Below are positions 16,722 to 46,205 of a stretch of DNA of 64,000 nt, in pieces; the stretch's first letter is position 1; each line of letters starts with the position of its first letter. The notes under the pieces were generated by a model. The model made no database searches and was not told the DNA's origin. It saw only the letters and a list, made by a program, of their open reading frames with translations. The stretch is from Mobula birostris (Eukaryota): NCBI RefSeq assembly GCF_030028105.1, contig NC_092382.1, positions 100,332,699-100,396,698 of the forward strand, given 5' to 3'. The position numbers and the translations under genes were made by a program.

Positions 16722-17040
16722 GCGGGCTATGTTTGGTTGACCTGCTTCCTTTCTACCCCATCCAGACTGCCCTTTATTTGTCAATACGCTTATTTGACAG
16801 AAATTGCGCTTTCAACAATTTCGCGGAGGAACTGAGAGCGGCAGAAGGGCCGGATCCTCTTCCTGTCGCTGCGGTTACCTCTCTGTCCCTGTTCCTTGGC
16901 GTGGCGGAGACGGTTGAATTCGGTGCTCCGATGTCGCCTCCTGCTGTTGCTGCAGGGAAACACCCACTTTGTCAACACCGCACAATGCACCCAAGTTCTT
17001 ACTCCCGGTCAGTCCACCTGTCCCTTGATCTCGATCAACC
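16722..17040 (-). promoter_or_regulatory. V-downstream non-coding module with CTCF-like core (16931-16950), about 1.56 kb 3' of the VA4 RSS
   Basis: Minus strand GCAACAGCAGGAGGCGACAT; flanks are homologous to five other copies. Confidence 0.55.
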
Positions 17041-17444
17041 AATCAATCTATCTATCTATCTTTTACATATCAATCCAACTGTCTATCTATCTATTCATCT
17101 ATCTGCTGGTCTATCTACCTATAGTCATCTCTCTCTCTCTCTAACCGTCTCTCTCTCTATCTATTAATCTATCCATTAATTTATCTATATATCTTTTCGT
17201 CTATCTGTTTATCTATCTATCTATCCATCCTTCTATTTATCTATTTATCTATCTCTCTATCATTCTATCCATTAATCTATCTCTCTTTATCCATCCATTA
17301 CACTCAGTCTAACTGTCTCTCTCGATCTGTCTATCGATCCATCCATTCATTTATCTATATATCTGTCTATCAATCTACCAATCTATCTCTATCTATCTAA
17401 TCACCTACCTAGCTATCTATCTGTTTACCTTTATATAACTATAT

Positions 17445-17970
17445 AACAAATACAGCACGGAAACAGGCCGTCTCGGCCCTTCTAGTCCGTGCCGAACGCT
17501 TAATCTCACCTAGTCCCACCGACCTGCACTCGGTCCATTACCCCCCATTCCTTTCCTGTCCGCATAGCTGTCCAATTATACTTTAATGACAATATCCAGC
17601 CTGCCTCACACACTTCTGCTGGAAGCACGTTCCACCCAGCCACCACTCTCTGTGTAAAGAAGTTCCCCATCGTTTCACCCCTAAACTTTTCCCCCTAACT
17701 CTCAACTCATGTCCTCTTGTTTGAATCTCCCCTAATTTCAATGGAAAAAAGCCTATCCACGTCAACTCAGTCTATCCCCCTCATAATTTTAAATACCTCT
17801 ATCAAGTCCCCCCTCAACCTTCTACGCTCCAAAGAATAAAGACCCAACTTGTTCAACCTTTCTCTGTAACTTAGGTGCTGAAACCCAGGTACATTTCAGT
17901 AAATCTTCTCTGTACTCTCTCTATTTTGTTGACATCTTTCCTATAATTCGGTGACCAGAACTGTACACAA
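17445..17970 (-). mobile_element. CR1 LINE 3' end
   Basis: FFPLKLGEIQTRGHELRV plus tail. Confidence 0.85.
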
Positions 17971-18509
17971 CTGTATCCATCTATCTATCATTCCATCTAG
18001 CTATCTAGCTAAGTAAATTTTTTGCACCACTTCTACAAGAAAGAACCCATTGGTTTTCTTTGGCGATACACCGGGGAAAAAGTCCTTCCCGAACCCTTCA
18101 GTAACCCACCGATTGAACACCAGCCGAATCAGAGGGCAGTAACCAACTAACCGGCAGGTCTGGCCACTGTGACTGGGAAACCGGAGCTCCTGGTCACGGG
18201 AAGAGCGTGCAAGCTCCGTAGAGAGAGCGTCGGAATTGACCTCCGAACCCTGACGTCACGATCTGCAATAGCGTCGCGCTCACGGCGACTCAACCCTGGC
18301 GCTCTTGGATTATGTTTAAACTGGTGGTGTGCTTGCAAGTGCTACTTATGACATGCTAGAAGCTATTCATCGCGACCCTTATCCGCGCCTCCTTGAAACC
18401 ACCCCGCGCGGAAGGCCCGGCCCCCTTCGTTTGAGTGACAGCCCCTTTCTCCCCCGCCTCTGGGGCACCTCTCCTATTACCAATGTGCAAGCCTCGCTTC
18501 AGCGTTGAT

Positions 18510-18548
18510 CGTTTTTGTTCGGTTTCACCATCCGCTCGAGCGGCTGTG
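18510..18548 (-). other. 23-RSS of VA4
   Basis: Minus strand CACAGCC + 23 nt + ACAAAAACG. Confidence 0.95.
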
Positions 18549-19202
18549 TAAACTCCAGGCGCAGAAGTAACGAGCCGAGTGGTTCTCAGTCAAATTGTTG
18601 GCAGTCAGCTGCAAATGGTAATCACCTCTCCTGGCCGTCAATCCATCCTCCGTTTCCTTCGGGCTGACGTGCATGCTGCTCATCGAGTAAAACAGGTTCC
18701 GAGGTTGTTTCCCCGGGTACTGTCGGTACCAGTACATGTAGTGACTGCTACCCCCTCCTTCCGCCGTACACTGCAAATCCATCCTGTCGCCAGGCGGTGC
18801 GGTGAATGCGACCGGAGTCTGGCGGACAGTCACCGACGTCCCGCCTGTGGAGAGGGAGCGGAGGCCAGGGTGAGGAGGGTACTTCGTGACGGACCTCAGG
18901 GGTGAGTGAGGCAGGATCTGAAGGAGGGGCGCGCCTGAGGGAGAGGGACGTTGTATTGATGCTGATCAATTGCGGCACACACTGAATATCAGAACTCCTC
19001 TGGGTTCAGGAATCATGGAAAGGAAAAGATATGTGGTGGCGAGCACAGGAAATGAAGATCACGTGGGGACAGAGAAGACAGACTTTATTTAATAGAACCC
19101 CCAAACACCGAAACCAGGTCAGGGTCAACAGCAAGACCAATGGCCTGCTTTGAGTCATTTTTACTGAATAATGAGAGAGAGATGTGAGAGAGAGAGGGAG
19201 AG

Positions 19203-19247
<45 letters not shown>

Positions 19248-21648: not shown

Positions 21649-22539
21649 GAGGGTGAAGGATGCCCGCTGCCAACTCTACCTGATCCTCTCCTAACCTTAT
21701 AAACCCCTCTCAGGTCCCTCCTTAGTCCCCGTCGCTCCAATTCCCCCAAGTTTGTCCCACCTCTCTCTAGAGCTCATGCCCGCCCCCCGATCTAGGCGGA
21801 GGCGTTTCCGGACCGTCGGGCAGCGCGGGAGACGAATACCACCCTCGGTGCGGCTGGGAACGTGCTCAGTTCATCTGTGTTGTAAACACAGGGGATTCTA
21901 AAGATGCTGTAAATCCAGCGAAGCTCACTTAAAATGCCGGAGGAACTCAGCAGGCCATCCGGAATGAACAAAGGCGGTCGGCGTTTCGAGCCCAGAGCCG
22001 CAATCAGTTCCTTCGTCGTCATCGGAATATTCCTTTAGGACCTTCGTTGAGGACCCATCGACCCGCGTGGACCCGGGCCCACAAGATCCGGAGAACCGTG
22101 CAGCACAGGCCACACCCTTCGGCCCACGGTCTCAAACTTACCCCCTCCCACATAGCGCAGAGCTGATCCGGGCGGCATCGTGTTCAGCCGAACTCTCGTC
22201 GAAGCCTCCGAGCCGTCTCCTTATGGGGTGTCCAGAACAGAATGTGACAACCTAAATCTATCATAAGGAGACGTTTTCTAAATCTTCAACGAAACGACTT
22301 GACCCTTCAAAGCGTCTGGGGGCGGGGGGACCACCGGATTTGCACGTGATATTCCATTTACAGCGGAAGCAAGTTTTTACATACTTTGTACATGACATTG
22401 TGGAATAACGAACGTGGTCAGATGATGGAGTGTTGGGGGGGGGGCGGTCAGCGGGGCGGGCGGGAGTTGGGGGGGTGGGCTCCCCCATAAAGCTGCGACT
22501 GAAGAAGAAAATCAGACGCTCAGGATTGTTAGCAAGTTA

Positions 22540-22865
22540 GCATAAAAATTGCGGGCTATGTTTGGTTGACCTGCTTCCTTTCCACCCCATCCAGACTGCC
22601 CTTTATTTGTCCTGACTCTGGTTTGACCGTATTTGCGCTTTCAACAATTCCGCGGAGGAACTGAGAGGGGCAGAAGGGCAGGATCCCTTTCCTGTCCCTG
22701 CGGTTTCCTCTCTGTCCCTGTTCCTTGGCCAGTCGGAAACTGTTGCATTTGGTGCTCCGATGTCGCCCCCTGCTGTTGGTGCAAAGAAATACCCACTTTG
22801 TCAACTCCGCACAATTCACCCAAGTTCTTATTCCCGGTCAGTTCACCTGTCTGTTGATCTCGATC
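22540..22865 (-). promoter_or_regulatory. V-downstream module with CTCF core (22760-22779), about 1.44 kb 3' of the VB1 RSS
   Basis: Minus strand CCAACAGCAGGGGGCGACAT. Confidence 0.6.
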
Positions 22866-23162
22866 AATCTATCTATGTATCCATCTATTACATACCTATC
22901 TATCTGTCTGTCTATCTATTCATCTATCTGTCTATCTTTCTATCTATAATAATCTATCTCTTGCTCTCTCTAACTGTCTCTCTATCTGTCTATCTATCTA
23001 TATATCAATTTATTTATCTATGTATCTACCTATCCGTCTGTCTGTCTCTCTATCTATCTATCCATTTGTTCATCTAACTCTTCCTCTATCCATCTATCTA
23101 GCTACCTATGTAGATATCTATCTATCTATTCATCTGGATATCCGACCACCTACCAATAATCG

Positions 23163-23201
<39 letters not shown>

Positions 23202-24216
23202 AAACTGTCTCCCTCTCGATCTATCTATTTATCTGTCTATTTGTTTATCTCTCTATCTATCTATCTATCTAACTGTCTACCTATATATCTAACTATCTAA
23301 TTTATCTATCTATCTATCTATATTATCTATCTGTCTCGCTCATTCTCTGTATATCTATCTGTCTTTCTCTGTTGTGGAGAAGGAGAGAGCGAGCCAGAAG
23401 GAGAGAGAGAGATAGAGAGAGAGATTAGCAGACTTGGTGGAGATGTAGATACACGGGTATACGTTTAGCTAGCCAGGTAAGCAGGTCAATGAGTATGATA
23501 TAAGCGTCAGTTGCCACTGCATTAGATACCTGCTGTACCCAACAGACTGCCCACTGAGTGTAGGCTCATCGTCCTCTGCTGCCGTCGCCCATCCGCCTCA
23601 GGATTCGACGTGTTGTGCGTTCAGAGACGCTCTTCTGCCCACGGCTGTTGTAACGTTGGTCTTTGCGGGTAACCGTCGCCTTCCAGTCTCAGTGAGCCAG
23701 CCTGGCCTCTGTCTGCGGACCTCTCCCGTGAAGAATTCTTCTACAAGCGCAGAAATGCCGCTCAGCGGATACGTATCAGCTGTATCGCAGTAGATTTAAT
23801 TTGGCTTTTTCCGACACTCATCAACTAAAAAAACTCTTCTGTGTCAAAGTGAAAACAGATCTCTACAAAGTGATCTGTATTGTTCACAAATACAGGTAGT
23901 TGCTTCCATTTGCTTTTTAGCAGGGTCAGCACAACATTGTGGGCCGAATGACCTGTTTCTGTGTTGTCCGGTTCTACATCCTACGGAGCTTGTTCGACCT
24001 GAATGTACTGTGTAATGATTTGTTCTGCATGTACAGAAAGCCTTTCGTTATATCTCGGTGGCGTGACAATGATAAACCTATTCCAATCCTTGCCAGAGAC
24101 GGAGAACTCCTGCAGCAAAGTAAAAGGCCCCTCGGTCCATCCAGTTCCGGTTCTGTACCTAGGTCCGATCTGCTCCCGGAACCTTGGCAGAGTTGCTCTG
24201 CGGGGAGATCTGTTGG

Positions 24217-24255
24217 AGTTTTTGTACTGGCGCCCAGTATCTCTACAACGCTGTG
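24217..24255 (-). other. 23-RSS of VB1
   Basis: Minus strand CACAGCG + 23 nt + ACAAAAACT. Confidence 0.95.
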
Positions 24256-25003
24256 CGCCATCGGTAGTAGCGCAGAAATAGGTCGCCGCGTCCGCGGCCT
24301 TCACGCCCTCGACCTGGAGGGTGAACTCCTTATTCTCCTTTGCCCTGGTGATGACGAACCCGCTCTTGAAGTCCTCCTCCCGCCGGGCCTCGCTGTTGAG
24401 GTAGACGGACCCGATCAAGGCCAGCCCGCCGGTGGACGGTTGGCGGTACCGGAGCATGTAGTCACGGTGCTGCCCCTTCTGAAGGCACTTCATCTCTGCC
24501 GGCGCCCCCTGGTGGACGCTGAGAGATCCGGGCCGCTGGTGGATCTCATCGGCCGGGCAGACACCTGCATAGAGAGAAGTGATAGGGGTTAGGAAAAACA
24601 GTGATGGACGGCGATGTGTTGCGCTGCATACACTAACCACGCGCAAAAAGGATTCATTTGGAGACTCGAGCTGTGGCGAAGCGGTTCGCCTTACGGTATT
24701 AAAACGCCAGCAACACGAGTTCAGTTCCCGCATCTGACCGTGAGGAATTAGTCCGCGTGGGTTTCGTCCGGGCGGCCCCACATTCAGAAGACTGCCGGGT
24801 TATCGGGTTAATTAGTCGTTTTGGGGGTGTAATCGGGCAGTTTGGGCCGCGCCGCAGCTCAACGAGAAGCGAGAGTCGGAACTCGAAAAGAGTTTGAGAC
24901 ATTTTGAGAGGAGGAAGCGGACAGCCGGAGAGCGAAGAGCACGTTCTCACGTACACAGAGCCAGAGAGAAGATCGTAGCAGAGAGGCAGCGCGCAGGCAT
25001 CAT
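24256..25003 (-). pseudogene. TRBV: TCR beta V segment VB1 (family B), open frame but Trp41->Arg (ORF or pseudogene). Leader 25003-24955, V exon 24564-24256
   Basis: Leader MMPARCLSATIFSLAL T|GTACGT. Exon VCPADEIHQRPGSLSVHQGAPAEMKCLQKGQHRDYML-R-YRQPSTGGLALIGSVYLNSEARREEDFKSGFVITRAKENKEFTLQVEGVKAADAATYFCATTDG, with TGG->CGG. Confidence 0.88.
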
Positions 25004-27199
25004 TGCTACCGGGCCGAGGCGGGTTCTAGTTCTTCAGTTCGCTCGGCGGACTGAAAGGTAGGCGGGCGACGTCGGAAGCTGAGTGCGGGTCTCGGGTTAT
25101 CACCCCTCCCCTTCCTAACCGAACGAGACGGAGAGACACTCGTCGTGGTGCGGTGGAGCGGCCGCTTCCGGGGGCCACGATCGTGGTTCGAACCTGACCA
25201 CGGGCGCCGTCTGCTCATCGAGTTGCTGGGGAGTTTCCAAATTCCAAATTCTCTTTGCATAATTTGTTCACTTTGTAATGCATAGTCATTTCATTTATTT
25301 GCTCTGTACAGCTGTCGAAGAACAAGAAGTTCCACGACGTTGAACTCAGCAGTAATAAAACAGATTCCGTTCCACATAACATATATACAGTAGCATGCAA
25401 AAGTTTGGGCACCCCAGCCAAAATGTCTGCTACCGTGAATAGCTAAGCGAGGAAAACATGACCTGATTTCCGAAAGGCATAAAGTTAAAGACGACACATT
25501 TCTTTAATATTTTAAGCAAGATTACTTTTTTTTTATTTCCATCTTTTGCAGTTTCAAAATAACAAAAAAAAGCAAAAGGGGCCGAAACAAAGCGTTGCTA
25601 TCTATCTATCTATCTACCTGTCTGTCTGTCTATCTGTCCATCTGNNNNNNNNNNNNNNNNNNNNNNNNNNNNNNNNNNNNNNNNNNNNNNNNNNNNNNNN
25701 NNNNNNNNNNNNNNNNNNNNNNNNNNNNNNNNNNNNNNNNNNNNNNNNNNNNNNNNNNNNNNNNNNNNNNNNNNNNNNNNNNNNNNNNNNNNNNNNNNNN
25801 NNNNNNNNNNNNNNNNNNNNNNNNNNNNNNNNNNNNNNNNNNNNNNNNNNNNNNNNNNNNNNNNNNNNNNNNNNNNNNNNNNNNNNNNNNNNNNNNNNNN
25901 NNNNNNNNNNNNNNNNNNNNNNNNNNNNNNNNNNNNNNNNNNNNNNNNNNNNNNNNNNNNNNNNNNNNNNNNNNNNNNNNNNNNNNNNNNNNNNNNNNNN
26001 NNNNNNNNNNNNNNNNNNNNNNNNNNNNNNNNNNNNNNNNNNNNNNNNNNNNNNNNNNNCTATCCATCTATCTTTCAATCTCTCTATTTAACCGTCTGTC
26101 TATCTATCTATTTATCCATCTATCTATCTATCTATCCATCTAGCTAGCTAACTGTTCATCTTTCTGCCTCTCACTGCAGGCTCGTACTGAATTAGCTATT
26201 ACAGAGAATGCAGGCTAACAGCGACATAACTCTACGATGCGTGATGAATAACGATAAGAAGGTCATTTCCATCCAATAAACACTTCTAGGGTAAATATGA
26301 TTCAGGCGAACACAAACATCACAGTTTGAATGTCCCTTTAAGGGATGTTACATGTATGAATTTGCTGTTCGCCAGAAAGTAGTCATTTAAGGTACACTAG
26401 TATTAACTTAAATTGAAATTGCATTGATAAACTATATAATGGAAAATAAAGAACAGAGGCCCATCGTATATACACAAAATTTAGTCTGTAATCGGTGCAC
26501 GTCATCGTTGGAGCTTATCGTTGCGTTATCCACCCGGTTTGAATCACGTCGTTTACTCACCGTGCCGACGAATTCTGCCTGGAAACCCCGGCAAAATCCA
26601 GGCGTCGAACTTTCTCCACGGTCACGTGATAACTCACCAACGAAGAGTTCTCTGCGCAGTCTCCCTGAGAGCACAGTCGGCCTGAGGACCTTCCGACGTC
26701 AGTCTCTGTACCTCCAGACGCGCCGCGTCACCACGTCCATCGCCCGTTTCCATTTTCCCTCTTTCTCCTTCTTCGATACCGCTCTCGCTCGAAAAAATGG
26801 CCGCCGCCCTCTTCCTTTTTCCCCACGCTCTCTCCAGCATGCACCGAAGACAATTTCTATCGTCTACTTCAATTGAGACTCACTTACCAATCACCGAATT
26901 TTATTTTAAACAGCATACATAAAATACTCTATTAATTAATGTAACTACAGGAAAATCTGCGGAAAGTAAAATGCACAACAACATAACTGAACATGAACAT
27001 AGAGACATAGAAAACATACAGCACAATACAGGCCCTACAGCCCACAAAGCTGAGCTGAACATGTACTCACTTTACAAATTACCTGGGGTTACCCATCGGC
27101 CTTTATTTTTCAAAGCTGCATGTACCTATCCAGGACTCTCTTAAAAGACCCTATTAAATCCGCCTCCACCACCATCGCCGACATCACACTGTCTGTAAA

Positions 27200-27716: not shown

Positions 27717-28096
27717 ATGTTATATGGAACGGAATCTGATTTATTACTGCTGATCGTGCAACTTCTTGTTCTGCGACAGCTGTACAGAGCAGATAAATGA
27801 AATGACTATGCATTACAAAGTGAGCAAATGATGCAAAGAGAATTCGTAATTTGGAAACTCCCCAGCAACTCGATGAACAGACGGCGCCCGTGGTCAGGTT
27901 CGAACCACGATCGTGGCTCCTGGAGGCGGCCGCTCGACTGCACCACGACGAGTGTCTCCCCACCCCCCCCCCCTCGTTCGGATAGGAAGGGGAGGGGTGA
28001 TAACCCGCGACCCGCCCTCGGCTTCCGATGTCGCCAGCCTTCCTTTCAGTCCGCCGAGCGAACTGAAGAACTAGAACCCGCCTCTGCCCGGCAGCA

Positions 28097-28846
28097 ATGA
28101 TGCCTGTGCGCTGCCTCCCTGCTGCGATCTTCTCTCTGGCTCTCTGTACGTGAGAACGCGCTCTTCGCTCTCCGGTTCTCCGCTTCCTCCTCTCAAAATG
28201 TCTCAAACTCTTTTCGAGTTCGGACTCTCGCTTCTCGTTGAGCTGCGGCGCGGCCCAAACTGCCCGATTACACTCGCAAAACGACTAATTAACCCAATAA
28301 CCCGGCAGTCTTCTGAATGTGGGGCCGCCCGGACGAAACCCACGCGGACTAATTCCTCACGGTCAGATGCGGGAACTGAACTCGTGTTGCTGGCGTTTTA
28401 ATACCATGAGGCGAACCGCTTCACCACCGCTCGAGTGTCCAAATGAATCCTTTCGCGCGTGGTTGGTGTATGCAGCGCAAAACAACGCCGTCCATCACCT
28501 TTTTTTCCCCAACCCCCTATCGCTTCTCTCTATGCAGGTGTCTGCCGGGCCGATGAGATCGACCAGTGGCCCGCATCTCTCAGCGTCCGCCAGGGGGAGC
28601 CGGCAGAGATGAAGTGCCTTCAGAAGGGGCAGCTCCGGGACAATATGCTCTGGTACCGCCAGCCGTCCACCGGCGGGCTGGCGCTGATTGGGTCCGTCTA
28701 CCTGAACAGCGAGGCCCGGCTGGAGGAGGACTTCAAGAGCGGGTTCGTCATCACCAGGGCTAAGGAGAATAAGCAGTCTACCCTGCAGGTCGAGAGTGTG
28801 AAGGCCGCGGACGCGGCGACCTATTTCTGCGCTACTACTGATGGCG
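28097..28846 (+). CDS. TRBV: TCR beta V segment VB2 (family B), apparently functional. Leader 28097-28145, V exon 28538-28846
   Basis: Leader MMPVRCLPAAIFSLAL T|GTACGT; acceptor atgcag|. Exon VCRADEIDQWPASLSVRQGEPAEMKCLQKGQLRDNMLWYRQPSTGGLALIGSVYLNSEARLEEDFKSGFVITRAKENKQSTLQVESVKAADAATYFCATTDG. Confidence 0.95.
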
Positions 28847-28885
28847 CACAGCGTTGTAGAGGTACTCGGCGCCAATACAAAAACT
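28847..28885 (+). other. 23-RSS of VB2
   Basis: CACAGCG + ttgtagaggtactcggcgccaat (23 nt) + ACAAAAACT. Confidence 0.96.
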
Positions 28886-29661: not shown

Positions 29662-29711
<50 letters not shown>

Positions 29712-29858: not shown

Positions 29859-29896
<38 letters not shown>

Positions 29897-34170: not shown

Positions 34171-34209
34171 CACAGCGTTGTAGAGGTACTCGGCGCCAAT
34201 ACAAAAACT
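34171..34209 (+). other. 23-RSS of VB3
   Basis: CACAGCG + 23 nt + ACAAAAACT. Confidence 0.96.
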
Positions 34210-35001
34210 CCAACAGGTTTCCCCGCAGAGCAACTCGGCCAGGGTTTCGGGGGCAGATCAACCTAGGTACAGAACCGGAACTGGATGGGCCGAGGGGCCT
34301 TTTACTTTGCTGAAGGTGTTCTCCGTCTCTGGCTAGGATTGGAATAGGTTTATCATTGTCACGCCACCGAGATATAGTGAAAGACTTTCTGTACATGCAG
34401 AACAAATCATTACACAGTACATTCAGGTCGAACAAGTTACGTAGGATGCAGAACCGGACAACACAGAAACAGGCCCTTCGGCCCACAATGTTGTGCTGAC
34501 CCAGCTAAAAAGCAAATGGAAGCAACTACCTGTATTTGTAATCAATACAAATCACTTTGTACAGATCTGTTTTCACTTTGACACAGAAGAGTTTTTTACG
34601 TTGATGAGTGTCGGAAAAAGCCAGATTAAATCCACTACGATACAACTGATAACATATCCGCTGAGCGGCATTTCTGCGCTGGTAGAAGAATTCTTCACGG
34701 GAGACGTCCGCAGAGAAAGGCCAGGCTGGTTCAGTGAGACTGGAAGGCGACGGTTACCCGCAAAGTTCAACGTTACAACAGCCGTGTGCAGAACAGCGTC
34801 TCTGAACGCACAACACGTCGAACCCTGAGGCGGATGGGCGACAGCAGCAGAGGACGATGAGCCTACACTCAGTGGGCAGTCTTTTGTGTACAGCAGGTAT
34901 CTAATGCAGTGGCAACTGACGTTTATATCATACTCATTGACCTGCTTACCTGGCTAGCTAAACGTATATCCGTGTAACTACATCTCCACCAAGTCTGATA
35001 A

Positions 35002-35069
<68 letters not shown>

Positions 35070-35654
35070 CCCCCCCTCCCTCGCTCGCTCTCTCCTTCTC
35101 CACAACAGAGAAAGACATATAGGTATACAGAGAATGAGCGAGGCAGACAGATAGATAATATAGATAGACAGCTAGATAGATAGATAGATAGATAATATAG
35201 ATAGAGAGATAGATAATATAGATAGAGAGATAGATAATATAGATAGATAAATTAGATAGATAGATAGACAGTTAGAAAGAGAGAGAGAGATAAACACAGA
35301 TAGACAGAAAAACAGATAGATGGAGAGGGAGATAGTTTGAGCGAGATTAATATTGGTAGGTGGACGGATTTCTAGATATATAGATAGAAAGATACGTACA
35401 TAGATAGATAGATGGATAGAGGAAGAGGTAGATAAACAAATGGATAGATAGATAGATAGAGAGACAGACAGGCGGATAGGTAGGTAGATAGATAATTAAA
35501 TTGATATATAGACAGATATAGACAGATAGATGGACAGAGAGACAGTTAGAGAGAGCAAGAGATAGATTATTCGAGGTAGAAAGACAGACAGATAGATGAA
35601 TAGACAGATAGAAAGATAGATATATATGTATGTAGATACATGGAAAGATGGATG

Positions 35655-35980
35655 GATCAAAATCAACAGACAGATGGACTGACCGGGAGTAAGAACGGAG
35701 TTGGCAATTGTGCGGAGTTGACAAAGTGGGTATTTCTTTGCACCAACAGCAGGGGGCGACATCGGAGCACCAAATGCAACAGTTTCCGCCCGGCCAAGGA
35801 ACAGGGACAGAGAGGAAATCGCAGGGACAGGAAAGGGATCCTGCCCTTCTACCCCTCTCAGTTCCTCCGCGGAATTCTTGAAAGCGCAAATACGGTCAAA
35901 CAAGAGTCAGGACAAATAAAGGGCAGTCTGGATGGGGTGGACAGGAAGCAGGTCAACCAAACATAGCCCGCAATGTTGAC
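35655..35980 (+). promoter_or_regulatory. V-downstream module with CTCF core (35743-35762), 3' of VB3
   Basis: CCAACAGCAGGGGGCGACAT. Confidence 0.6.
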
Positions 35981-38587
35981 GCTAACTTGCTAACGATCTG
36001 AACGCCTGAATTTCTTCTCCAGTCGCAGCTTTATGGGGGAAGGGCAAAGAGCGAGCCATTGTTGAAAAGAAACTCACATGAAATCAAGGCTAGAGTTTGC
36101 CAGAAGGCTTGTGGTAGATTCTGAAGTCAGCTGGAAGAAGCTTTTATGGTCCGATGAAACCAAACTTGAGCTATTTTGGCTATCGGATAAAAACGCTATG
36201 ATTGGCGTAAGCCACATGCTCACATCATCAAAAACACACCATCCTAACTGTGAAGCGTGGTGGCGGCTGCATCATGCTGTGGGGATGTTTCACTGCAGCA
36301 GGCCCTGGAAGGCTTGTAAAGGTACAGGGTAAAATGAATGCAGCAAAATGCAGGGAAATCCCGGAGGAAAACCTGATGCAGTCTGCAAGAGAACTGCCAC
36401 TTGGGAGGGGATTTGTTTTCTCGTCAAGCGGTGACCCCAGGGACAAAGCAAATACTACACAGGAATGGCTTAAAAACAACAAAGTTAATGTCCTGGAGTG
36501 GCCAAGTCAGAGTCCAGACCTTAATCTAATTGAGAATGTGTGGCTGGACTTGAAAAGGACTGTTCACTCATGATCCCCATGCAATCTGACAGATCTTGAG
36601 CTGTTTTGTAAAGAAGAATAGGGAAAAATTGCAGTGTCCACATGTGCAAAGCTGCTCGAGCCCCATCAACACAGACTCAAGGCTGGAATTGCTGCCAAAG
36701 AGGCATCTACTCGTACTGACTTGAAGGGGGTTAAAACTTGGACAATCAATTATTTTTTGTTTTATGCGTATAATTAATTTAGATCACTTTGTAGCGACCT
36801 GATTTCACACGGAAGAGTCTCTTTCTGTCTATCAGTGTCAAACTAGCCAAATTACATCCACACTGACTCAATACTGTAAAACAAAAAAACATGAAAACTT
36901 TCAAGGAGTGGTGCGTAATTTTCGCAGGCACTGTGTCCGACCATAAATCGGTAACGTCCAGGAGCAGAATTAGGCCACTGGTTCATCGATTCTGCTGCGC
37001 TATTTCATCATCCATTTTCCATCTCACCCCCAATCTTCACCCTTCTCACCGTATCCCTTGATCCGCTGACCAATCAACTATCTATCAAGATCTGCCTTAG
37101 ATGTTCAGCTGCGTGTGACAAACAAGTCCACCGACTCACTACTCTCTATCTAAAGAAATTCCTCCCCATCTCCTTTCTGAAAGGACGGCCCTCCATTCTG
37201 AGGCTGTGTCCTCTGGTCTTAAACTTATACTTTATACTTTATTGTCGCCAATCGATTGATACTAGACCGTACAATCATCACAGCGATATTTGATTCTGCG
37301 CTTCCTGCTCCCTGGATTACAGATATTAAATATTAAAAATTGTAAAAATTAGTAAATATTAACATTCTCAATTATAAATCATAAATAGAAAATGGGAAAA
37401 CGGAATATAAGGTAGTGCAAAAAAAAACCGAGAGGCAGGTCCGGATATTTGGAGGGTACGGCCCTGATCCGGGTCCGGATCCGTTCAGCAGTCTTATCAC
37501 AGTTGGAAAGCAGCTGTTCCCAAATCTGGCCGTACGAGTCTTCAAGCTCCTGAGCCTTCTCCCGGAGGGAAGAGGGACGGAAAGTGTGTTGGCTGGGTGG
37601 GTCGTGTCCTTGATTATCCTGGCAGCACTGCTCCGACAGCGTGCGGTGTAAAGTGAGTCCAGGATGGAAGATTGGTTTGTGTGATGTGCTGGGCCGTGTT
37701 CACGATCTCCTGCAGCTTCTTCAGGTCTTGGACAGGACAACTTCCAGACCAGGTTGTGTTGCACCCTATAATCTATCATACTCTCCCAGCATAGGTAACA
37801 TCCTCTCCACGTCCACTCTATCAAGGTCTATCAAAAGGCTTCAATCAGATCACAGCTCCCTCTTCCGAATTCCGGTGAATGCAGGCCCAGAGCCATCAAA
37901 CACTCTTCATATGACAGGCCATTCAATCTTGCAATCATTTCCGTCAATCTCCTCTGAACCCTCCCCAGTTTCAGCACGACTTTTCTACAGTAATGTGCCC
38001 AATACTGCTCATAATACTCCAGGTGAGGCCTGGAAAGTAACCTTTAAGAAATCCTCCACAAGGACTCCCAAATCCCATTGCACCTCAATGTATAGCTTTA
38101 TTTTCTCTCTACTTAGAAAACAAGGAAAGCTTTCATATCGTCTGCCAAAGTGCAGAACCGCACACTTCCCGACACTGTATTCTATCTGTAACTTGCACGC
38201 CCATTTTCCGAATCTGCCTCGTCCTTCTGCTCCTATCTCATTAACCCTTCCTGCCCCTCCACCTGCCTTGGTGTTGCCTGCAAACTTTACAACAAAGCCA
38301 TCAACTCCACTATCCAAATCACTGACATATAGTCTACAAGGAACTGGTCCCAACCCGGATCCCTGTGGAACACCAGTACTCATTGGCAGCCAGTGAGAAA
38401 AGGCTCCCTTCATTCCGGGTAGCGGCCGCTCGACTGCACCACGACGAGTGTCTCCCCACCTCCCTCGTTCGGAAAGGGAGGGGCGGGGTGATAACCCGCG
38501 ACCCGCCCTCGGATTCAGATATCGCCCGCCTTCCTTTCAGTCCGCCGAGCGAACTGAAGAACTAGAACCCGCCTCAGCCCGGCAGCA

Positions 38588-39335
38588 ATGGTGCCTGCGC
38601 GCTGCCTCTCTGCTGCGATCTTCTGTCTGGCTCTGAGTACGTGACAACGCGTTTTTCGCTCTCCGGTTCTGCGCTTCGACCTCTCAAAGTGTCCAAAAGT
38701 CGTTTCGACTTCCGACTCTCGCTTCTCGTTGAGCTACGGCGCGGCCCAAACTGCCCGATTACATTTCCAAAACGACTAATTAACCCACTGACCCGGCATT
38801 CTTCTGAATGTGGGGCCGCCCGGACTAAACCCACGCGAACTAATTCCTCACGGTCAGAGGCGGGAACCGAACTCGAGTTGCTGGCGTTTTAATACCGTGA
38901 GGCGAACCGCTTCGCCACCGAGTGAGTGTCCATATGAATCCTTTTGCGCGTGGTCAGTGTATGCAGCGCAACACATCGCCGTCCATCATTTTTTTTTCCC
39001 AACCCCGATCTCTTCTCTCTATGCAGGTGTGTGCCGGGCCGATGAGATCCACCAGCGGCCCGGATCTCTCAGCGTCCGCCAGGGGGTGCCGGCCGAGATG
39101 AAGTGCCTTCAGAAGGGGCAGCTCCGTGAGAACATGCTCTGCTACCGCCAGCCGTCCACCGGCGGGCTGGCCTTGATCGGGTCCGTCTATCTCAGCAGCG
39201 AAGCTCGGATGGAGGAGGACTTCAAGGGCGGGTTCGTCATCACCAGGGCAAAGGAGAATAAGGAGTCCACCCTCCAGGTCGAGGGCGTGAAGGCCGCGGA
39301 CGCGGCGACCTATTTCTGCGCTACTACTGATGGCG
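38588..39335 (+). pseudogene. TRBV: TCR beta V segment VB4 (family B), open frame but Trp41->Cys (ORF or pseudogene). Leader 38588-38636, V exon 39027-39335
   Basis: Near-identical to VB3 except ATGCTCTGCTACCGC (MLCYR) in place of ATGCTCTGGTACCGC (MLWYR). Confidence 0.88.
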
Positions 39336-39374
39336 CACAGCGTTGTAGAGGTACTCGGCGCCAATACAAAAACT
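39336..39374 (+). other. 23-RSS of VB4
   Basis: CACAGCG + 23 nt + ACAAAAACT. Confidence 0.96.
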
Positions 39375-40167
39375 CCAACAGGTTTCCCCGCAGAGCAACT
39401 CGGCCAAGGTTTCGGGGGCAGATCGGAACTAGGTACAGAACCGGAACTGGATGGGCCGAGGGGCCTTTTACTTTGCTGAAGGTGTTCTCCGTCTCTGGCT
39501 AGGATTGGAATAGGTTTATCATTGTCACGCCACCGAGATATAGTGAAAGACTTTCTGTACATGCAGAACAAATCATTACACAGTACATTCAGGTCAAACA
39601 AGTTACGTAGGATGCAGAACCGGACAACACAGAAACAAGCCCTTCGGCCCACAATGTTGTGCTGACCCAGCTAAAAAGCAAATGGAAGCAACTACCTGTA
39701 TTTGTAATCAATACAAATCACTTTGTACAGATCTGTTTTCACTTTGACACAGAAGAGTTTTTTACGTTGATGAGTGTCGGAAAAAGCCAGATTAAATCCA
39801 CTACGATACAACTGATAACATATCCGCTGAGCGGCATTTCTGCGCTGGTAGAAGAATTCTTCACGGGAGACGTCCGCAGAGAAAGGCCAGGCTGGTTCAG
39901 TGAGACTGAAAGGCGACGGTTACCCGCAAAGTTCAACGTTACAACAGCCGTGTGCAGAACAGCGTCTCTGAACGCACAACACGTCGAACCCTGAGGCGGA
40001 TGGGCGACGGCAGCAGAGGACGATGAGCCTACACTCAGTGGGCAGTCTTTTGTGTACAGCAAGTATCTAATGCAGTGGCAACTGACGCTTATATCATACT
40101 CATTGACCTGCTTACCTGGCTAGCTAAACGTATATCCGTGTATCTACATCTCCACCAAGTCTGATAA

Positions 40168-40214
<47 letters not shown>

Positions 40215-40789
40215 CCCCCCCCCCCCACCTCTCCCTCGCTCGCTCTCTCCTTCTCCACAACAGAGAAAGACATATAGGTATACAGAGAATGAGCGAGGCA
40301 GACAGATAGATAATATAGATAGACAGCTAGATAGATAGATAGATAGATAATATAGATAGAGAGATAGATAATATAGATAGATAAATTAGATAGATAGATA
40401 GACAGTTAGAAAGAGAGAGAGAGATAAACACAGATAGACAGAAAAACAGATAGATGGAGAGGGAGATAGTTTGAGCGAGATTATTATTGGTAGGTGGACG
40501 GATTTCTAGATATATAGATAGAAAGATACGTACATAGATAGATAGATGGATAGAGGAAGAGGTAGATAAACAAATGGATAGATAGATAGATAGAGAGACA
40601 GACAGGCGGATAGGTAGGTAGATAGATAATTAAATTGATATATAGACAGATATAGACAGATAGATGGACAGAGAGACAGTTAGAGAGAGCAAGAGATAGA
40701 TTATTCGAGGTAGAAAGACAGACAGATAGATGAATAGACAGATAGAAAGATAGATATATATGTATATAGATACATGGAAAGATGGATGG

Positions 40790-41115
40790 ATCAAAATCAA
40801 CAGACAGATGGACTGACCGGGAGTAAGAACGGAGTTGGCAATTGTGCGGAGTTGACAAAGTGGGTATTTCTTTGCACCAACAGCAGGGGGCGACATCGGA
40901 GCACCAAATGCAACAGTTTCCACCCGGCCAAGGAACAGGGACAGAGAGGAAATCGCAGGGACAGGAAAGGGATCCTGCTCTTTTACCCCTCTCAGTTCCT
41001 CCGCGGAATTCTTGAAAGCGCAAATACGGTCAAACAAGAGTCAGGACAAATAAAGGGCAGTCTGGATGGGGTGGAAAGGAAGCAGGTCAACCAAACATAG
41101 CCCGCAATGTTGACG
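40790..41115 (+). promoter_or_regulatory. V-downstream module with CTCF core (40877-40896), 3' of VB4
   Basis: CCAACAGCAGGGGGCGACAT. Confidence 0.6.
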
Positions 41116-43714
41116 CTAACTTGCTAACAATCTCAACGTCTGATTTTTTTCTCCAGTCGCAGCTTTATGGGGGAAGGGCAAAGAGCCGAGCCATTGTTGA
41201 AAAGAAACTCACATAAAATCAAGGCTAGAGTTTGCCAGAAGGCTTGTGGGAGATTCTGAATCATCTGCGAGAAGATTTTATGGTCCGATGAAACTAAAAT
41301 TGAGCTTTTTTGGCCATCGGCTGTGTTTCGCGTAAGATAAATGCTCACATCATCAAAAACACACCATCCTAACCGTGAAGCGTGATGGTGGCTGCATCAT
41401 GCTGTGGGGATGTTTCACTGCAGCAGGCTCTGGAAGGCTTGTGAAGATAGAGGATAAAATGAATGCAGCAAAATACAGGGAAATCCCGGAGGAAAACCTG
41501 ATGCAGTCTGCAAGAGAACTGCCACTGGGGAGGGGATTTGTTTCTCGTCAAGCGGTGACTCCAGGCATAAAGCAAATACTACACAGGAATGGTTTGAAAA
41601 CAACAAAGTTAATGTCCTGGAGTGGCCAAGTCAGAGTCCAGACCGTAATCTAATTGAGAATGTGTGGCTGGACTTGAAAAGGACTGTTCACTCATGATCC
41701 CCATGCAATCTGACAGATCTTGAGCTGTTTTGTAAAGAAGAATAGGGAAACATTGCAGTGTCCACATGTGCAAAGCTGATCGAGACCCATCAACACAGAC
41801 TCAAGGCTGGAACTGCTGCCAAAGAGGCATCTACTCGTACTGACTTGAAGGGGGTTAAAACTTGGACAATCAATTATTTTTTGTTTTATGTTTGTAAATA
41901 ATTTAGATCACTTTGTAGCGACCTGATTTCACACGGAAGAGTCTCTTTCTGTCTATCAGTGTCAAACTAGCCAAATTACATCCACACTGACTCAATGCTG
42001 TAAAACAAAAAAACATGAAAGCTTTCAAGGAGGGGTGCGTAATTTTCGCAGGCACTGTGTCCGACCATAAATCGGTAACGTCCAGGAGCAGGATTAGGCC
42101 ACTGGCCCATCGATTCTGCCGCGCTATTTCATCATCCATTTTCCATCTCACCCCCAATCTTCACCCTTCTCACCGTATCCCTTGATCCGCTGACCAATCA
42201 ACTATCTATCAACATCTGCCTTAGATGTTCAGCTGCGTGTGACAAACAAGTCCACCGATTCACTACTCTCCATCTAAAGAAATTCCTCCCCATCTCCTTT
42301 CTGAAAGGACGGCCCTCGATTCTGAGGCTGTGTCCTCTGGTCTTATACTTATACTTTATACTTCATCGTCGCCAAACAATTGATACTAGAACATACAATC
42401 ATCACAGCGATATTTGATTCTGCGCTTCCTGCTCCCTGGATTACAGATATTAAATATTAAAAATTGTAAAAATTAGTAAATATTAACATTCTCAATTATA
42501 AATCATAAATAGAAAATGGAAAAACGGAAAGTAAGGTAGTGCGAAAAAAAAAACGAGAAGCAGGTCCGGATATTTTGAGGGTACGGCCCAGATCCGGGTC
42601 CGGATCCGTTCAGCAGCCTTATCACAGTTGGAAAGAAGCTGTTCCCAAATCTGGCCGTAAGACTCTTCAAGCTCCTGAGCCTTCTCCCGGAGGGAAGAGG
42701 GACGGAAAGTGTGTTGGCTGGGTGGGTCGTGTCCTTGATTATCCTGGCAGAACTGCTCCAACAGCGTGCGGCGAAAAGTGAGTCCAAGTTTGGAAGATCG
42801 GTTTGTGTGATGTGCTGGGCCGTGTTCACGATCTTCTGACGCTTCTTCGGGTCTTGTACAGGACAACTTCTGTACCAGGTTCTGCTGCACTCTATAATCT
42901 ATCATACTCTCCCACCATAGGTAACATCCTCTCCACGTCCACTCTATCAAGGTCTATCAAAAGGCTTCAATCAGATCACCGCTCGTTCTTCCGAATTCCA
43001 GTGAATACAGGCCCACAGCCATCAGACACTCTTCATATGACAGGCCATTCAATCCTGCAATCATTTCCGTGAACCTCCTCTGAACCCTCCCCAGTTTCAG
43101 AACGAACTTTCTAAGATAAAAGGCCCACAACTGCACGTAACACTCCAGGTGAGGTCTGGAAAGCACCCTTTGAGGGAAACCTCCACAAGGACTCCCAAAT
43201 TTCGTTGCGCCTCAATGTATATTTCTATTTTCTCTCTATTTAGAAAACAGGCAATGCTTTCATATCGTCTGCCAAAGTGCAGGACCGTACACTTCCCGAC
43301 ACTGTATTCTATCTGTAACTTCCACGCCCATTTTCCGAATCTGCCTCGTCCTTCTGCTCCTATCTCATTAACCCTTCCTGCCCCTCCACCTGCCTTGGTG
43401 TTGCCTGCAAACTTTACAACAAAGCCATCAACTCCGCTATCCAAATCACTGACATATAATCTACAACTAACTGGTGCCAACCCGGATCCCTGTGGAACAC
43501 CAGTGCTCATTGGCAGCCAGTGAGAAAAGGCTCCCTTCATTCCGGGTAGCGGCCGCTCGACTGCACCACGACGAGTGTCTCCCCACCCCCCTCGTTCGGA
43601 AAGGGAGGGGCGGGGTGATAACCCGCGACCCGCCCTCGGCTTCAGATATCGCCCGCCTTCCTTTCAGTCCGCCGAGCGAACTGAAGAACTAGAACCCGCC
43701 TCAGCCCGGCAGCA

Positions 43715-44462
43715 ATGGTGCCTGCGCGCTGCCTCTCTGCTGCGATCTTCTGTCTGGCTCTGAGTACGTGAGAACGCGCTTTTCGCTCTCCGGTTCTGCG
43801 CTTCGACCTCTCAAAGTGTCCAAAAGTCGTTTCGACTTCCGACTCTCGCTTCTCGTTGAGCTACGGCGCGGCCCAAACTGCCCGATTACATTTCCAAAAC
43901 GACTAATTAACCCACTGACCCGGCATTCTTCTGAATGTGGGGCCGCCCGGACTAAACCCACGCGAACTAATTCCTCACGGTCAGAGGCGGGAACTGAACT
44001 CGAGTTGTTGGCGTTTTAATACCGTGAGGCGAACCGCTTCGCCACCGAGCGAGTGTCCATATGAATCCTTTTGCGCGTGGTCAGTGTATGCAGCGCAACA
44101 CATCGCCGTCCATCATTTTTTTTTCCCAACCCCGATCTCTTCTCTCTATGCAGGTGTGTGCTGGACCGATGAGATCCACCAGCGGCCCGGATCTCTCAGC
44201 GTCCGCCAGGGGGTGCCGGCCGAGATGAAGTGCCTTCAGAAGGGGCAGCTCCGTGAGAACATGCTCTGGTACCGCCAGCCGTCCACCGGCGGGCTGGCCT
44301 TGATCGGGTCCGTCTATCTCAGCAGCGAAGCCCGGATGGAGGAGGACTTCAAGGGCGGGTTCGTCATCACCAGGGCAAAGGAGAATAAGGAGTCCACCCT
44401 CCAGGTCGAGGGCGTGAAGGCCGCGGACGCGGCGACCTATTTCTGCGCTACTACCGATGGCG
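43715..44462 (+). CDS. TRBV: TCR beta V segment VB5 (family B), apparently functional. Leader 43715-43763, V exon 44154-44462
   Basis: Leader as in VB3; exon VCWTDEIHQRPGSL..MLWYRQ..YFCATTDG is open with all hallmark residues. Confidence 0.94.
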
Positions 44463-44501
44463 CACAGCGTTGTAGAAATACTGGGCGCCAGTACAAAACC
44501 T
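44463..44501 (+). other. 23-RSS of VB5
   Basis: CACAGCG + 23 nt + ACAAAACCT. Confidence 0.93.
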
Positions 44502-45293
44502 CCAACAGATCTCCCCGCAGAGCAACTCTGCCAAGGTTCCGCGAGCAGATCGGAACTAGGTACAGAACCGGAACTGGATGGGCCGAGGGTCCTTTTACTT
44601 TACTGCAGGAGTTCTCCGTCTCTGGCTGGGATTGGAATAGGTTTACCATTGTCACGCCACCGAGATATAGTGAAAGACTTTCTGTACATGCAGAACAAAT
44701 CATTACACAGTACATTCAGGTCGAACAAGCTCCGTAGGATGGAGAACCGGACAAAACAGAAACAGGCCCTTCGGCACACAATGTTGTGCTGACCCTGCTA
44801 AAAAGCAAATGGAAGCAACTACCTGTATTTGGGAACAATACAGATCACTTTGTAGAGATCTGTTTTCACTTTAAACGAAAGAGGCTTTTTCTGTTCATGA
44901 GTGTCGGAATAAAGCCAAATTAAATCTACTGCGATACAGCTGATACGTATCCGCTGAGCGGCATTTCTGCGCTTGTGGACGAATTCTTCATGGGAGAGGT
45001 CCGCAGAGAAAGGCCAGGCTGGTTCAATGTGACTGGAAGACGACGGTTACCCGCAAAGTTCAACGTTACAACAGCCGTGTGCAGGTGAGCGTCTCTGAAC
45101 GCACAACACGTCGAACCCTGAGGCGGATGGGCGACGGCAGCAGAGGACGATGAGCCTACACTCAGTGGGCTGTCTATTGAGTACAGCAGGTATCTAATGG
45201 ACTGGCAACTGACGCTTATATCATACCCATTGACCTGCTTACGTGGCTACCTAAAGCACTTTCCGTGCATCTACCCCTCCACCAAGTCTGCTA

Positions 45294-45336
<43 letters not shown>

Positions 45337-45929
45337 GCTCGCTCGCTCCTTCTCCACAACAGAGAAAGACAGATACATATACAGAGAATGAGCGAGACAG
45401 ATAGATAGATAGATAAGCAGGTAGACATGGAAATAGATAGATTAGATAGATATATAGAGGGAGAGAGAGAGAGAGAATAGAATAGATAGATAGAATAAAT
45501 AGATAGATAGATAAGCAGGTAGACATAGAGATAGATAGATTAGATAGATATATATATAGAGAGAGAATANNNNNNNNNNNNNNNNNNNNNNNNNNNNNNN
45601 NNNNNNNNNNNNNNNNNNNNNNNNNNNNNNNNNNNNNNNNNNNNNNNNNNNNNNNNNNNNNNNNNNNNNNNNNNNNNNNNNNNNNNNNNNNNNNNNNNNN
45701 NNNNNNNNNNNNNNNNNNNNNNNNNNNNNNNNNNNNNNNNNNNNNNNNNNNNNNNNNNNNNNNNNNNNNNNNNNNNNNNNNNNNNNNNNNNNNNNNNNNN
45801 NNNNNNNNNNNNNNNNNNNNGAGAGATAGGGAGAAAGATAGATAGATAGAATGAGAGAGAGAGAGAGGGAGAGAGAGAGAGACTGATTGACTGATGACAG
45901 ACAGGCAGACAACCCTGCAGGCAGATAGT

Positions 45930-46205
45930 TGGATCAACAGACAGGTGGTCTGACCGGGAGTTTTTAGAGTGAAATATGCGGAGCTGGCAATGGGGTGTTC
46001 CTTCACAGCAACAGCAGGGGGCGCCCACGGAGCAACACTCTCCGCCCGGCCACAGAACCGGTCACAGAGAGGGGGAATTACGGGGACAGGAAGGAAACCT
46101 TGCACGTCCGCGTCTCCCAATTCCTCCGAGAAACAGTTGAAAGTGCAGCTAAGGTTACAGAATGCTAAACGGCAGTCTGAGGCGGTGGACAGGTGGAGCA
46201 GCCAT
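45930..46205 (+). promoter_or_regulatory. Divergent V-downstream module with CTCF core (46008-46027), 3' of VB5
   Basis: GCAACAGCAGGGGGCGCCCA; the flanks are visibly more diverged than the core. Confidence 0.62.

What the first reader, a model, noticed from the sequence alone, without database searches (positions are those of the whole stretch)
16722..46205. A V-linked, V-oriented CTCF module sits ~1.5 kb downstream of V segments of two unrelated families
Seen: a ~300-nt non-coding module bounded by GATA microsatellite occurs six times. The core ACAGCAGG[GA]GGCG is at 16931-16950 (-), 22760-22779 (-), 30586-30605, 35743-35762, 40877-40896 and 46008-46027 (+). Each lies 1.4-1.7 kb 3' of an RSS (VA4, VB1-VB5) and always in the V's transcriptional orientation, although the DNA between RSS and module differs completely between VA4 and the VBs. 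The core stays intact in the most diverged copy. Known: the CTCF core consensus is CCAGCAGGGGGCGC-like, and oriented CTCF sites beside V segments control RAG scanning and V usage in mouse Igh and Tcr loci. Inference: a portable 'V plus CTCF anchor' architecture in a cartilaginous-fish TCR locus, possibly an early loop-extrusion system for V accessibility. No such module was seen after VA1-VA3 or VB6.
Basis: partly seen in the sequence, partly recalled or inferred. Interest (0 to 1): 0.78.

Follow-up and report, generated by a model that had tools for sequence, protein, structure and literature searches.

The report
CTCF-motif module copied with ray V cassettes
A 327-base non-coding element with a good CTCF-type motif really occurs six times behind T-cell-receptor V genes of this ray. 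It sits there mainly because it was copied with one 5-kb V-gene cassette, so it is a plausible but unproven chromatin-loop anchor, not a portable design shared by two V families.

Summary
Exactly six copies of a ~327-nt module are in the window. Each lies 1.44-1.70 kb behind a V RSS, in the V's orientation, with the stated core.

- Copies c2-c5 belong to one ~5.15-kb V cassette that was duplicated in tandem and once inverted. c6 is an old copy (~70% identity) at the end of the same array.
- Only c1, behind VA4, is an independent placement. It is a ~576-nt copy bounded by microsatellite. Its similar spacing is coincidence: the interval is one third high-copy transposon and one quarter microsatellite. 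Its motif is the weakest (11 bits against 16).
- The module is not a dispersed repeat. Contigs of the source species give about 5-8 copy-equivalents, against about 10^4-10^5 times more for the neighbouring transposon.
- The core is the best-kept block: 1 change against 7 expected, P about 0.01 if the position is fixed in advance. It ties with another block, and some block that well kept arises by chance 35% of the time.
- Among the young cassettes the module evolves at the neutral rate.
- Two V-to-module links cross assembly gaps, and the orientation of the 9-kb block holding c1 and c2 is not secured.

No binding data exist. The scan has reported RSS-adjacent CTCF motifs elsewhere in this locus. 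The V genes here lack those.

The parts
16711..17036 (-). Module copy c1, behind VA4. Core at 16935-16947 carries G>A; PWM 11.0 bits.
   Evidence: It is 86-88% identical to c2-c5. Homology to the cassettes is limited to 16707-17282.
22540..22865 (-). Module copy c2, behind VB1, inside the inverted copy of the VB cassette. Core 22764-22776; 16.2 bits.
30501..30826 (+). Module copy c3, behind VB2. Core 30589-30601; 16.3 bits. Separated from VB2 by the gap at 30253-30403.
35655..35983 (+). Module copy c4, behind VB3. Core 35746-35758; 16.2 bits. The link to its V is gap-free.
40789..41117 (+). Module copy c5, behind VB4. Core 40880-40892; 16.2 bits. 98.8% identical to c4.
45931..46230 (+). Module copy c6, behind VB5 and across the gap at 45570-45820. 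Old copy, about 70% identical to the others. Core 46011-46023 intact; 15.9 bits.
27926..45563 (+). Tandem array of the ~5.15-kb VB cassette: V exon, RSS, about 1 kb unique DNA, (AGAT)n, module, 2.4-kb region X. Holds VB2-VB5.
   Evidence: Self-BLAST at 89-96% identity; three-cassette alignment
22481..25591 (-). Inverted partial copy of the cassette: VB1, its downstream DNA and c2.
   Evidence: 23208-25591 matches 29891-27509 at 90%
18511..18833 (-). VA4 V exon (18833-18528, as matched by tblastn; its last bases overlap the heptamer) and RSS (heptamer at 18549, RSS ends 18511).
17431..17962 (.). High-copy dispersed repeat (transposon fragment) between the VA4 RSS and c1. A second copy lies at 47307-47831.
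   Evidence: summed contig depth 0.8-2.2 million against about 40 for single-copy DNA.: the two copies are 86% identical.
17037..17430 (-). (GATA)n-type microsatellite upstream of c1, in module orientation.
16600..16706 (+). (ATAG)n array abutting the 3' end of c1, inverted relative to the upstream array. It runs into the gap at 16444-16599.
35145..35626 (+). (AGAT)n array upstream of c4. Equivalent arrays lie at 22863-23336, 29769-30252, 40300-40791 and 45395-45930.
13453..15760 (+). Extra copy of cassette region X, 87-95% identical, with neither module nor V.

Best explanation
The module is a real, low-copy, locus-restricted piece of intergenic DNA embedded in (GATA)n arrays. It belongs to the VB-family V cassette.

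Shown:
- The module was multiplied together with its V by segmental duplication. Three tandem steps gave c3-c5, one inverted copy gave c2, and c6 is an older copy at the array's end.
- One short stretch of microsatellite plus module was copied ectopically to a place 1.56 kb behind VA4 (c1).
- Its position and orientation relative to V are therefore inherited. They are not independently acquired in two families.

Inferred:
- The c1 copy most probably arose by recombination or template switching between GATA arrays.
- The conserved core is more likely than not under some constraint. The most likely mechanism, at about 45%, is a forward-facing CTCF-binding element. In the four + copies it points toward the D-J region and would stall cohesin beside each VB segment, like the CBEs interspersed among mouse Trbv segments. 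c1 would be a weakened copy.
For: - Six copies and no more in the window.
- Cassette homology extends kilobases beyond the module for c2-c5.
- The tree places c6 on a long branch (0.35), c1 at 0.09, and c2-c5 as a young group.
- c1 homology is only 16707-17282 and ends in microsatellite on both sides. c1 and c6 share the layout (GATA)n-module-(TATC)n.
- Summed contig depth over the module in the source species is 75-309, against about 30-50 for single-copy contigs. Only 1-4 variant contigs are seen. The transposon 400 nt away reaches about 10^6 with more than 100 variant contigs.
- A related species (organism B) has a module contig with the GGGGG core.
- The PWM score of 15.9-16.3 bits has a null frequency of 1.25e-6 per position.
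- The 13-nt core shows 1 parsimony change against 7.0 expected, P=0.007, or 0.0105 with the local rate.
- VA and VB segments here have no RSS-adjacent CTCF motif, best score at most 3.3 bits on the V strand.
- Skates use an oriented CTCF code (PMC10115646). Mouse Tcrb has 18 V-side CBEs convergent to the D-J CBEs (PMC10772921).
Against: - No occupancy data exist.
- The core ties with another 10-nt invariant block. Some 13-column window with at most 1 change arises in 35% of column shuffles.
- Among the three young cassettes the module changes faster (0.092 per column) than the cassette median (0.062).
- c1 lost an informative G.
- c1 and c2 face away from D-J as assembled.
- VB6 and VA1-VA3 do without the module.
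- An equal or better CTCF-like match lies inside the VB exon itself. A 16-bit match can therefore arise here with no architectural role implied by its position.
- The scan looks for CTCF motifs, so chance matches that fall in a duplicated cassette are selected for.
- Contig depth is only a rough copy number.
Confidence: 0.5

Rival explanations
1. Neutral passenger. The module is ordinary intergenic DNA of the VB cassette. Its CTCF-like core is a chance match that binds nothing of consequence, and its survival in c6 is luck.
For: - The module evolves at or above the cassette's average rate.
- CpG content is not raised: 0.57-0.78 against 0.74 for the window.
- Another block is equally invariant, and the any-window P is 0.35.
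- c1 has lost the motif's strength.
- About 0.16 matches of this score are expected per window, so dozens are expected over the windows scanned.
- V genes without the module exist.
Against: The 13-nt core, defined by the PWM and not by conservation, has 1 change against 7 expected (P about 0.01). It is unbroken in a copy with only 70% identity, and also in a related species.
Confidence: 0.4
2. A portable 'V plus oriented CTCF anchor' unit has been selected independently behind V segments of two unrelated families, at a set distance of about 1.5 kb.
For: c1 lies 1564 nt behind the VA4 RSS in the V's orientation, although the intervening DNA is unrelated to that of the VB cassettes.
Against: - There is one independent event only.
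- Its interval contains a 532-nt high-copy transposon and 394 nt of microsatellite, so the spacing is not a kept property.
- c1 has the weakest motif, 11.0 bits.
- VA1-VA3 and VB6 lack the module.
- c1 is younger than the VA family: 86-88% non-coding identity to c2-c5, against 76-82% between VA exons.
Confidence: 0.1
3. Relic of an old mobile element that carried a CTCF site, as B2 SINEs do in mouse, later trapped in the cassette.
For: - The module has a sharp 3' boundary shared by c1, c6 and (59 nt further) c2.
- Microsatellite lies on its flanks.
- Copies under 80% identity would have escaped the read test.
Against: - Only about 5-8 copy-equivalents at 80% identity or more.
- A profile able to find the 70% copy finds nothing else in 64 kb, whereas true transposons recur there.
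- No Rfam or tRNA-like match.
- No terminal inverted repeats or poly-A were seen.
Confidence: 0.1
4. A different cis-regulatory element, such as an enhancer or germline promoter. It would be read by other factors through the other kept blocks: two GGAA (ETS-type) cores and the CTGACCGGGA block.
For: Identity between c6 and the rest is clustered in short blocks (P=0.06 without gap columns). These include GACAGGAAG and TTCCTCCG.
Against: The clustering is marginal. No RNA run holds the module. The motif assignments are by eye only.
Confidence: 0.1

Closest known systems
CTCF-binding elements interspersed among mouse Trbv segments (18 CBEs, all convergent to the CBEs flanking D-beta/J-beta; PMC10772921)
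   Same: A TCR-beta-type V array. An oriented CTCF-type motif lies in the intergenic DNA near V segments. Four of the six copies face the D-J side.
   Different: No binding data here. The sites are copies of one duplicated cassette, not independent sites. Two copies face the other way as assembled. Several V segments have none.
RSS-adjacent CBEs of mouse and human IGH V segments, and the RSS-adjacent CTCF-type motifs this scan noted in other V families of this same locus (s1-145130, s1-145129, s1-145257)
   Same: The motif is V-associated and co-oriented with the V.
   Different: Here the motif is about 1.5 kb from the RSS, not 20-40 bp. The VA and VB segments of this window have no RSS-adjacent motif.
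Transposon-borne CTCF sites (for example mouse B2 SINE; own knowledge)
   Same: A CTCF motif is multiplied by copying of the DNA that carries it.
   Different: Spread here is by local segmental duplication of a V cassette. The module is low-copy and confined to this locus at 80% identity or more.

Membership tests
CTCF-binding element of an antigen-receptor V array | Sequence match to the CTCF core motif (JASPAR MA0139.1) well above background | tested here: met
   c2-c6 score 15.9-16.3 of 26.4 bits, null 1.25e-6 per position. c1 scores only 11.0 bits, null 3.3e-5.
CTCF-binding element of an antigen-receptor V array | Occupancy by CTCF and cohesin in developing lymphocytes | not testable with these tools
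   No ChIP, CUT&Tag or Hi-C data could be reached. No RNA run holds the module.
CTCF-binding element of an antigen-receptor V array | Motif kept beyond the neutral rate | tested here: inconclusive
   1 change against 7.0 expected in the 13-nt core (P=0.007 with the position fixed in advance). P=0.35 for any window, and the core ties with CTGACCGGGA.
CTCF-binding element of an antigen-receptor V array | Orientation convergent with CBEs at the recombination centre | tested here: inconclusive
   c3-c6 are forward on the + strand, toward the D-J cluster that an unchecked note places about 18 kb right of the window. c1 and c2 are reversed. The block that holds them lies between two gaps with inverted microsatellite ends.
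   Five copies trace to one cassette. There is one ectopic copy, whose spacing is made up by a transposon and microsatellite.
Dispersed repeat / transposon family | Many copies outside the locus | tested here: not met
   Summed contig depth is 75-309 against about 40 for single-copy DNA, with 1-4 variant contigs. The neighbouring transposon reaches about 10^6 with more than 100 variants. Copies below 80% identity were not tested.
Dispersed repeat / transposon family | Structural hallmarks (tRNA-like head, terminal repeats, tail) | tested here: not met
   No Rfam match in 13-48 kb apart from low-complexity hits. No coding potential.
Segmental-duplication cassette | Collinear homology that extends from the module into the V gene and its flanks | tested here: met
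   30447-40425 matches 35602-45540 at 94.5%, and 22481-25591 matches the inverted cassette at 85-92%. Not met for c1.

The most novel reading that the evidence does not exclude
The module is a working forward CTCF anchor that the D-proximal VB family carries 1.5 kb behind its RSS, in place of the RSS-adjacent sites reported for other V families of the same ray TRB locus. Anchor position would then turn over between V families, and new anchors would be made simply by duplicating a V cassette. That would give a natural series (VB2-VB5 with the anchor, VB6 without, c1 with a weakened core) for asking what such an anchor does to V usage in a cartilaginous fish.
Probability: 0.35. Interest if true: 0.5.

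Novelty: new member of a known kind. Interest (0 to 1): 0.3.

Why it matters
If the modules bind CTCF, this ray would show that loop anchors beside TCR-beta V genes exist outside mammals, and that they are gained passively when a V cassette duplicates. The array offers built-in controls: paralogous V genes with, without and with a weakened site. If they do not bind, the finding is a caution. In tandem V arrays, any chance motif in the repeat unit will look V-linked, V-oriented and evenly spaced.

Tried and rejected
- Exon hypothesis. A pyrimidine tract plus CAG precedes the core. The AG is CAC in c2, c4 and c5. The indels in c6 (9, 10, 3 and 1 nt) do not keep a frame. The 105-144-aa ORFs over the module have no Pfam match. 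Rejected.
- Structured RNA or SINE head. Rfam at E up to 1 gives only low-complexity miRNA-like hits outside the module.
- CpG island or protected CpGs. Module CpG o/e is 0.57-0.78 against 0.74 for the window, and several CpGs have decayed to CpA/TpG. No signal.
- Expression. No run on record as RNA holds the module, which proves nothing.
- Chain type of the V segments. A sequence search of solved structures did not separate TCR-beta from other V domains. The identification rests on V-set domains, 23-spacer RSSs and the scan's notes on the neighbouring D-J cluster.
- Findings look-up by sequence: blank.
- Homology between the VA4-to-c1 interval and the VB RSS-to-module interval: none beyond microsatellite at relaxed settings.
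- Gaps. I could not bridge any gap with reads. The single read-laying run began just right of the gap at 16444-16599, and all pieces were short contigs.
Full report

Yes. The core pattern (one mismatch allowed) occurs six times, at the stated places and strands. Shuffles give 0.10 expected, and none of 100 reached six.

Aligning 550-700 nt around each core shows a shared stretch of about 327 nt preceded by GATA-type microsatellite. A profile built from that stretch recovers the same six copies (E 1e-77 to 1e-115) and nothing else in the window:

| Copy | Position | Strand |
|---|---|---|
| c1 | 17036-16711 | - |
| c2 | 22865-22540 | - |
| c3 | 30501-30826 | + |
| c4 | 35655-35983 | + |
| c5 | 40789-41117 | + |
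| c6 | 45931-46230 | + |

V-set exons (Pfam E 1e-7 to 1e-12) with heptamer-23-nonamer signals lie upstream of each copy on the same strand. They are VA4 (18833-18528, -), VB1 (24550-24245, -) and VB2-VB5 (+).

From the end of the RSS to the start of the core I measure 1564, 1441, 1704, 1537, 1506 and 1510 nt. VA1, VA2, VA3 (11871-11605, -) and VB6 (50887-51192) have no module.

**2. The gaps**

All three gaps in the finding's range, and the one just left of it (16444-16599), sit inside GATA-type arrays. The sequence on both sides of each gap is microsatellite of the same polarity.

For 30253-30403 and 45570-45820 the flanks are collinear with the gap-free cassettes. The interval is 512 nt against 270 nt in one case and 379 nt against 363 nt in the other. 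Continuity is therefore plausible, but the VB2-c3 and VB5-c6 distances are estimates, and further cassettes could be hidden there.

The block 16600-25644 holds c1, VA4, c2 and VB1. It lies between two gaps and ends in inverted microsatellite arrays, so either orientation would fit its neighbours. The V-to-module orientation inside the block is secure. The block's orientation relative to the rest is not. I could not bridge the gaps.

**3. How the six copies are related**

Self-comparison shows a cassette of about 5.15 kb repeated in tandem from 27926 to 45563 at 89-96% identity. Its order is V exon, RSS, about 1 kb of unique DNA, (AGAT)n, module, then a 2.4-kb region X. c3, c4 and c5 are parts of it.

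c2 lies in an inverted partial copy of the same cassette (22481-25591), head to head with VB2.

c6 follows VB5 but is only about 70% identical to the others, while the DNA just left of the gap is still cassette-like. It is an old copy outside the recently duplicated or homogenised unit.

Pairwise identities and the tree agree:
- c6 sits on a long branch (0.35).
- c1 is at 0.09.
- c3 follows, then c2 with the near-identical pair c4 and c5 (98.8% identical).

Five of the six copies therefore trace to one VB cassette. Their linkage, spacing and orientation relative to V are inherited together.

**4. The cross-family case, c1**

Homology of c1 to the cassettes covers only 16707-17282, that is, microsatellite plus module at 81-86%. 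It ends in microsatellite on both sides.

c1 and c6 share the layout (GATA)n, module, (TATC)n. This suggests copying by recombination or template switching between GATA arrays, which are frequent in the window. That step is inference.

c1 is 86-88% identical to c2-c5 in non-coding DNA, whereas the VA exons are only 76-82% identical to each other. c1 therefore arrived after the VA family diversified.

The 1564 nt between the VA4 RSS and the core are made up as follows:

| Segment | Length (nt) |
|---|---|
| Unique DNA | 548 |
| Very abundant dispersed repeat (17431-17962) | 532 |
| Microsatellite | 394 |
| Module, up to the core | 89 |

In the VB cassettes the same distance is about 1 kb of unique DNA plus about 0.5 kb of microsatellite. 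The equal spacing is therefore coincidence. It is one event, with a one-in-two chance of matching orientation.

**5. Is it a dispersed repeat?**

No, at 80% identity or more. I laid Logan contigs of four runs on 16600-22599 at 80% likeness.
- **Source species, module:** the summed depth is 75-217 per bin and 176-309 at individual positions. Only 1-4 variant contigs are seen.
- **Source species, single-copy DNA:** contigs of the same stretch have depth 29-50. That makes about 5-8 copy-equivalents, close to the five copies of 80% identity or more in the window.
- **Source species, neighbouring repeats:** the repeat at 17431-17962 reaches 0.8-2.2 million with about 60 to over 100 variant contigs. 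The stretch 20.0-22.0 kb reaches 10^4-10^5.
- **Organism B (about 93% identical in unique DNA):** it has a module contig of the c2-c5 type with the GGGGG core.
- **Organism D (more distant):** nothing lies on the module, although it has the V exon at 89%. For neutral DNA that says little.

Caveats: depth of contigs is a rough measure, and copies below 80% identity would be missed.

**6. How good is the CTCF match, and is it conserved?**

The 19-mer scores 15.9-16.3 of 26.4 bits in c2-c6 and 11.0 in c1. On 4 Mb of first-order Markov sequence:

| Score threshold | Frequency per position | Expected per window |
|---|---|---|
| 16.2 bits or more | 1.25e-6 | 0.16 |
| 11 bits or more | 3.3e-5 | 4 |

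Conservation is suggestive, not decisive.
- **For constraint:** the 13-nt core shows one parsimony change (the G>A of c1) against 7.0 expected over the tree. That gives P=0.007, or 0.0105 with the rate of the 5' half.
- **Against, within the module:** the longest invariant run (10 nt) is tied with CTGACCGGGA. Shuffling columns gives some 13-column window with at most 1 change in 35% of trials.
- **Against, among the young cassettes:** the module changes at 0.092 per column, against a cassette median of 0.062 and 0.01 for the V exon. The module as a whole is not constrained.

CpG content is not raised.

**7. Context that bears on function**
- The VA and VB segments of this window have no CTCF-type motif just behind the RSS. 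The best score on the V strand is at most 3.3 bits. Earlier notes of this scan report such motifs for other V families of this locus (I did not check those windows).
- A first-reader note places the D-J cluster about 18 kb to the right of the window (unchecked). If so, c3-c6 are forward motifs pointing to D-J. That is the orientation of the 18 V-side CBEs of mouse Tcrb, all convergent to the CBEs around D-beta/J-beta (PMC10772921).
- An oriented CTCF code with loop extrusion has been shown in a skate (PMC10115646).
- Against a simple rule: c1 and c2 face the other way as assembled. The strongest intergenic motif in the window (7204-7222, 20.2 bits) is antisense to its neighbouring V genes. The VB exon itself carries an equal or better match in FR1.

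**8. Verdict**

The structure is settled. It is a low-copy, locus-restricted intergenic element carried by the VB cassette and spread by segmental duplication, with one ectopic, microsatellite-bounded copy behind VA4.

The claim of a portable architecture shared by two families is not supported. Whether the core is a working CTCF site is open. I put it at about 45%, against about 40% for a neutral passenger with a chance motif.

It would be a new member of a known kind (V-array CBEs), not a new kind. The scan has already reported CTCF-type motifs beside V segments elsewhere in this genome. This case differs only in its distance from the RSS and in how plainly it was copied.

**9. What led nowhere**

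An exon, a structured RNA, a SINE head and a CpG island were each tested and rejected. No RNA run holds the module. A search of solved structures did not settle the chain type of the V domains.

Noticed in passing
window 24500-24518(-), 28584-28602, 33908-33926, 39073-39091, 44200-44218, 50919-50937(+): Every VB V exon carries a CTCF-type match inside FR1 (coding ...VRQG.PAE...), on the V's own strand. Scores are 13.0-17.0 bits, and 23.3 bits (near-perfect) in VB1. These match or beat the module's core.
   Followed up: partly
window 7204-7222(-) and 4299-4317(-): The strongest intergenic CTCF-type motif of the window (20.2 bits) lies about 1 kb upstream of the VA2 exon, antisense to it. A 14.6-bit motif lies about 125 nt behind the VA1 RSS, also antisense.
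   Followed up: no
window 16600-25644: The 9-kb block with the inverted V segments VA4 and VB1 lies between two assembly gaps and ends in inverted GATA arrays. Its orientation may be a scaffolding choice, or the block may be invertible in nature.
   Followed up: partly
window 17431-17962, 47307-47831 and 20000-22000: Extremely abundant dispersed repeats: summed contig depth up to 2 million in the source species, and also present in the three other organisms laid. One copy sits between VA4 and c1, another about 1 kb after c6.
   Followed up: partly
window 13453-15760: An extra copy of cassette region X (87-95% identical), preceded by microsatellite but with no module and no V. It is followed at 16269-16441 by the cassette's pre-module sequence. 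This looks like a degenerate cassette.
   Followed up: partly
window 24550-24245(-) and 39041-39346(+): VB1 and VB4 have lost the invariant Trp of the WYRQ motif (LRYRQ and LCYRQ). They are probably non-functional, although their frames are open.
   Followed up: no
window 3850-4153: VA1 is frameshifted: its match to VA4 is split over frames. Its nonamer is degraded (ACAGAACCT). Likely a pseudogene.
   Followed up: no
window 19894-20169: A 111-nt unit repeated about 2.3 times upstream of VA4.
   Followed up: no
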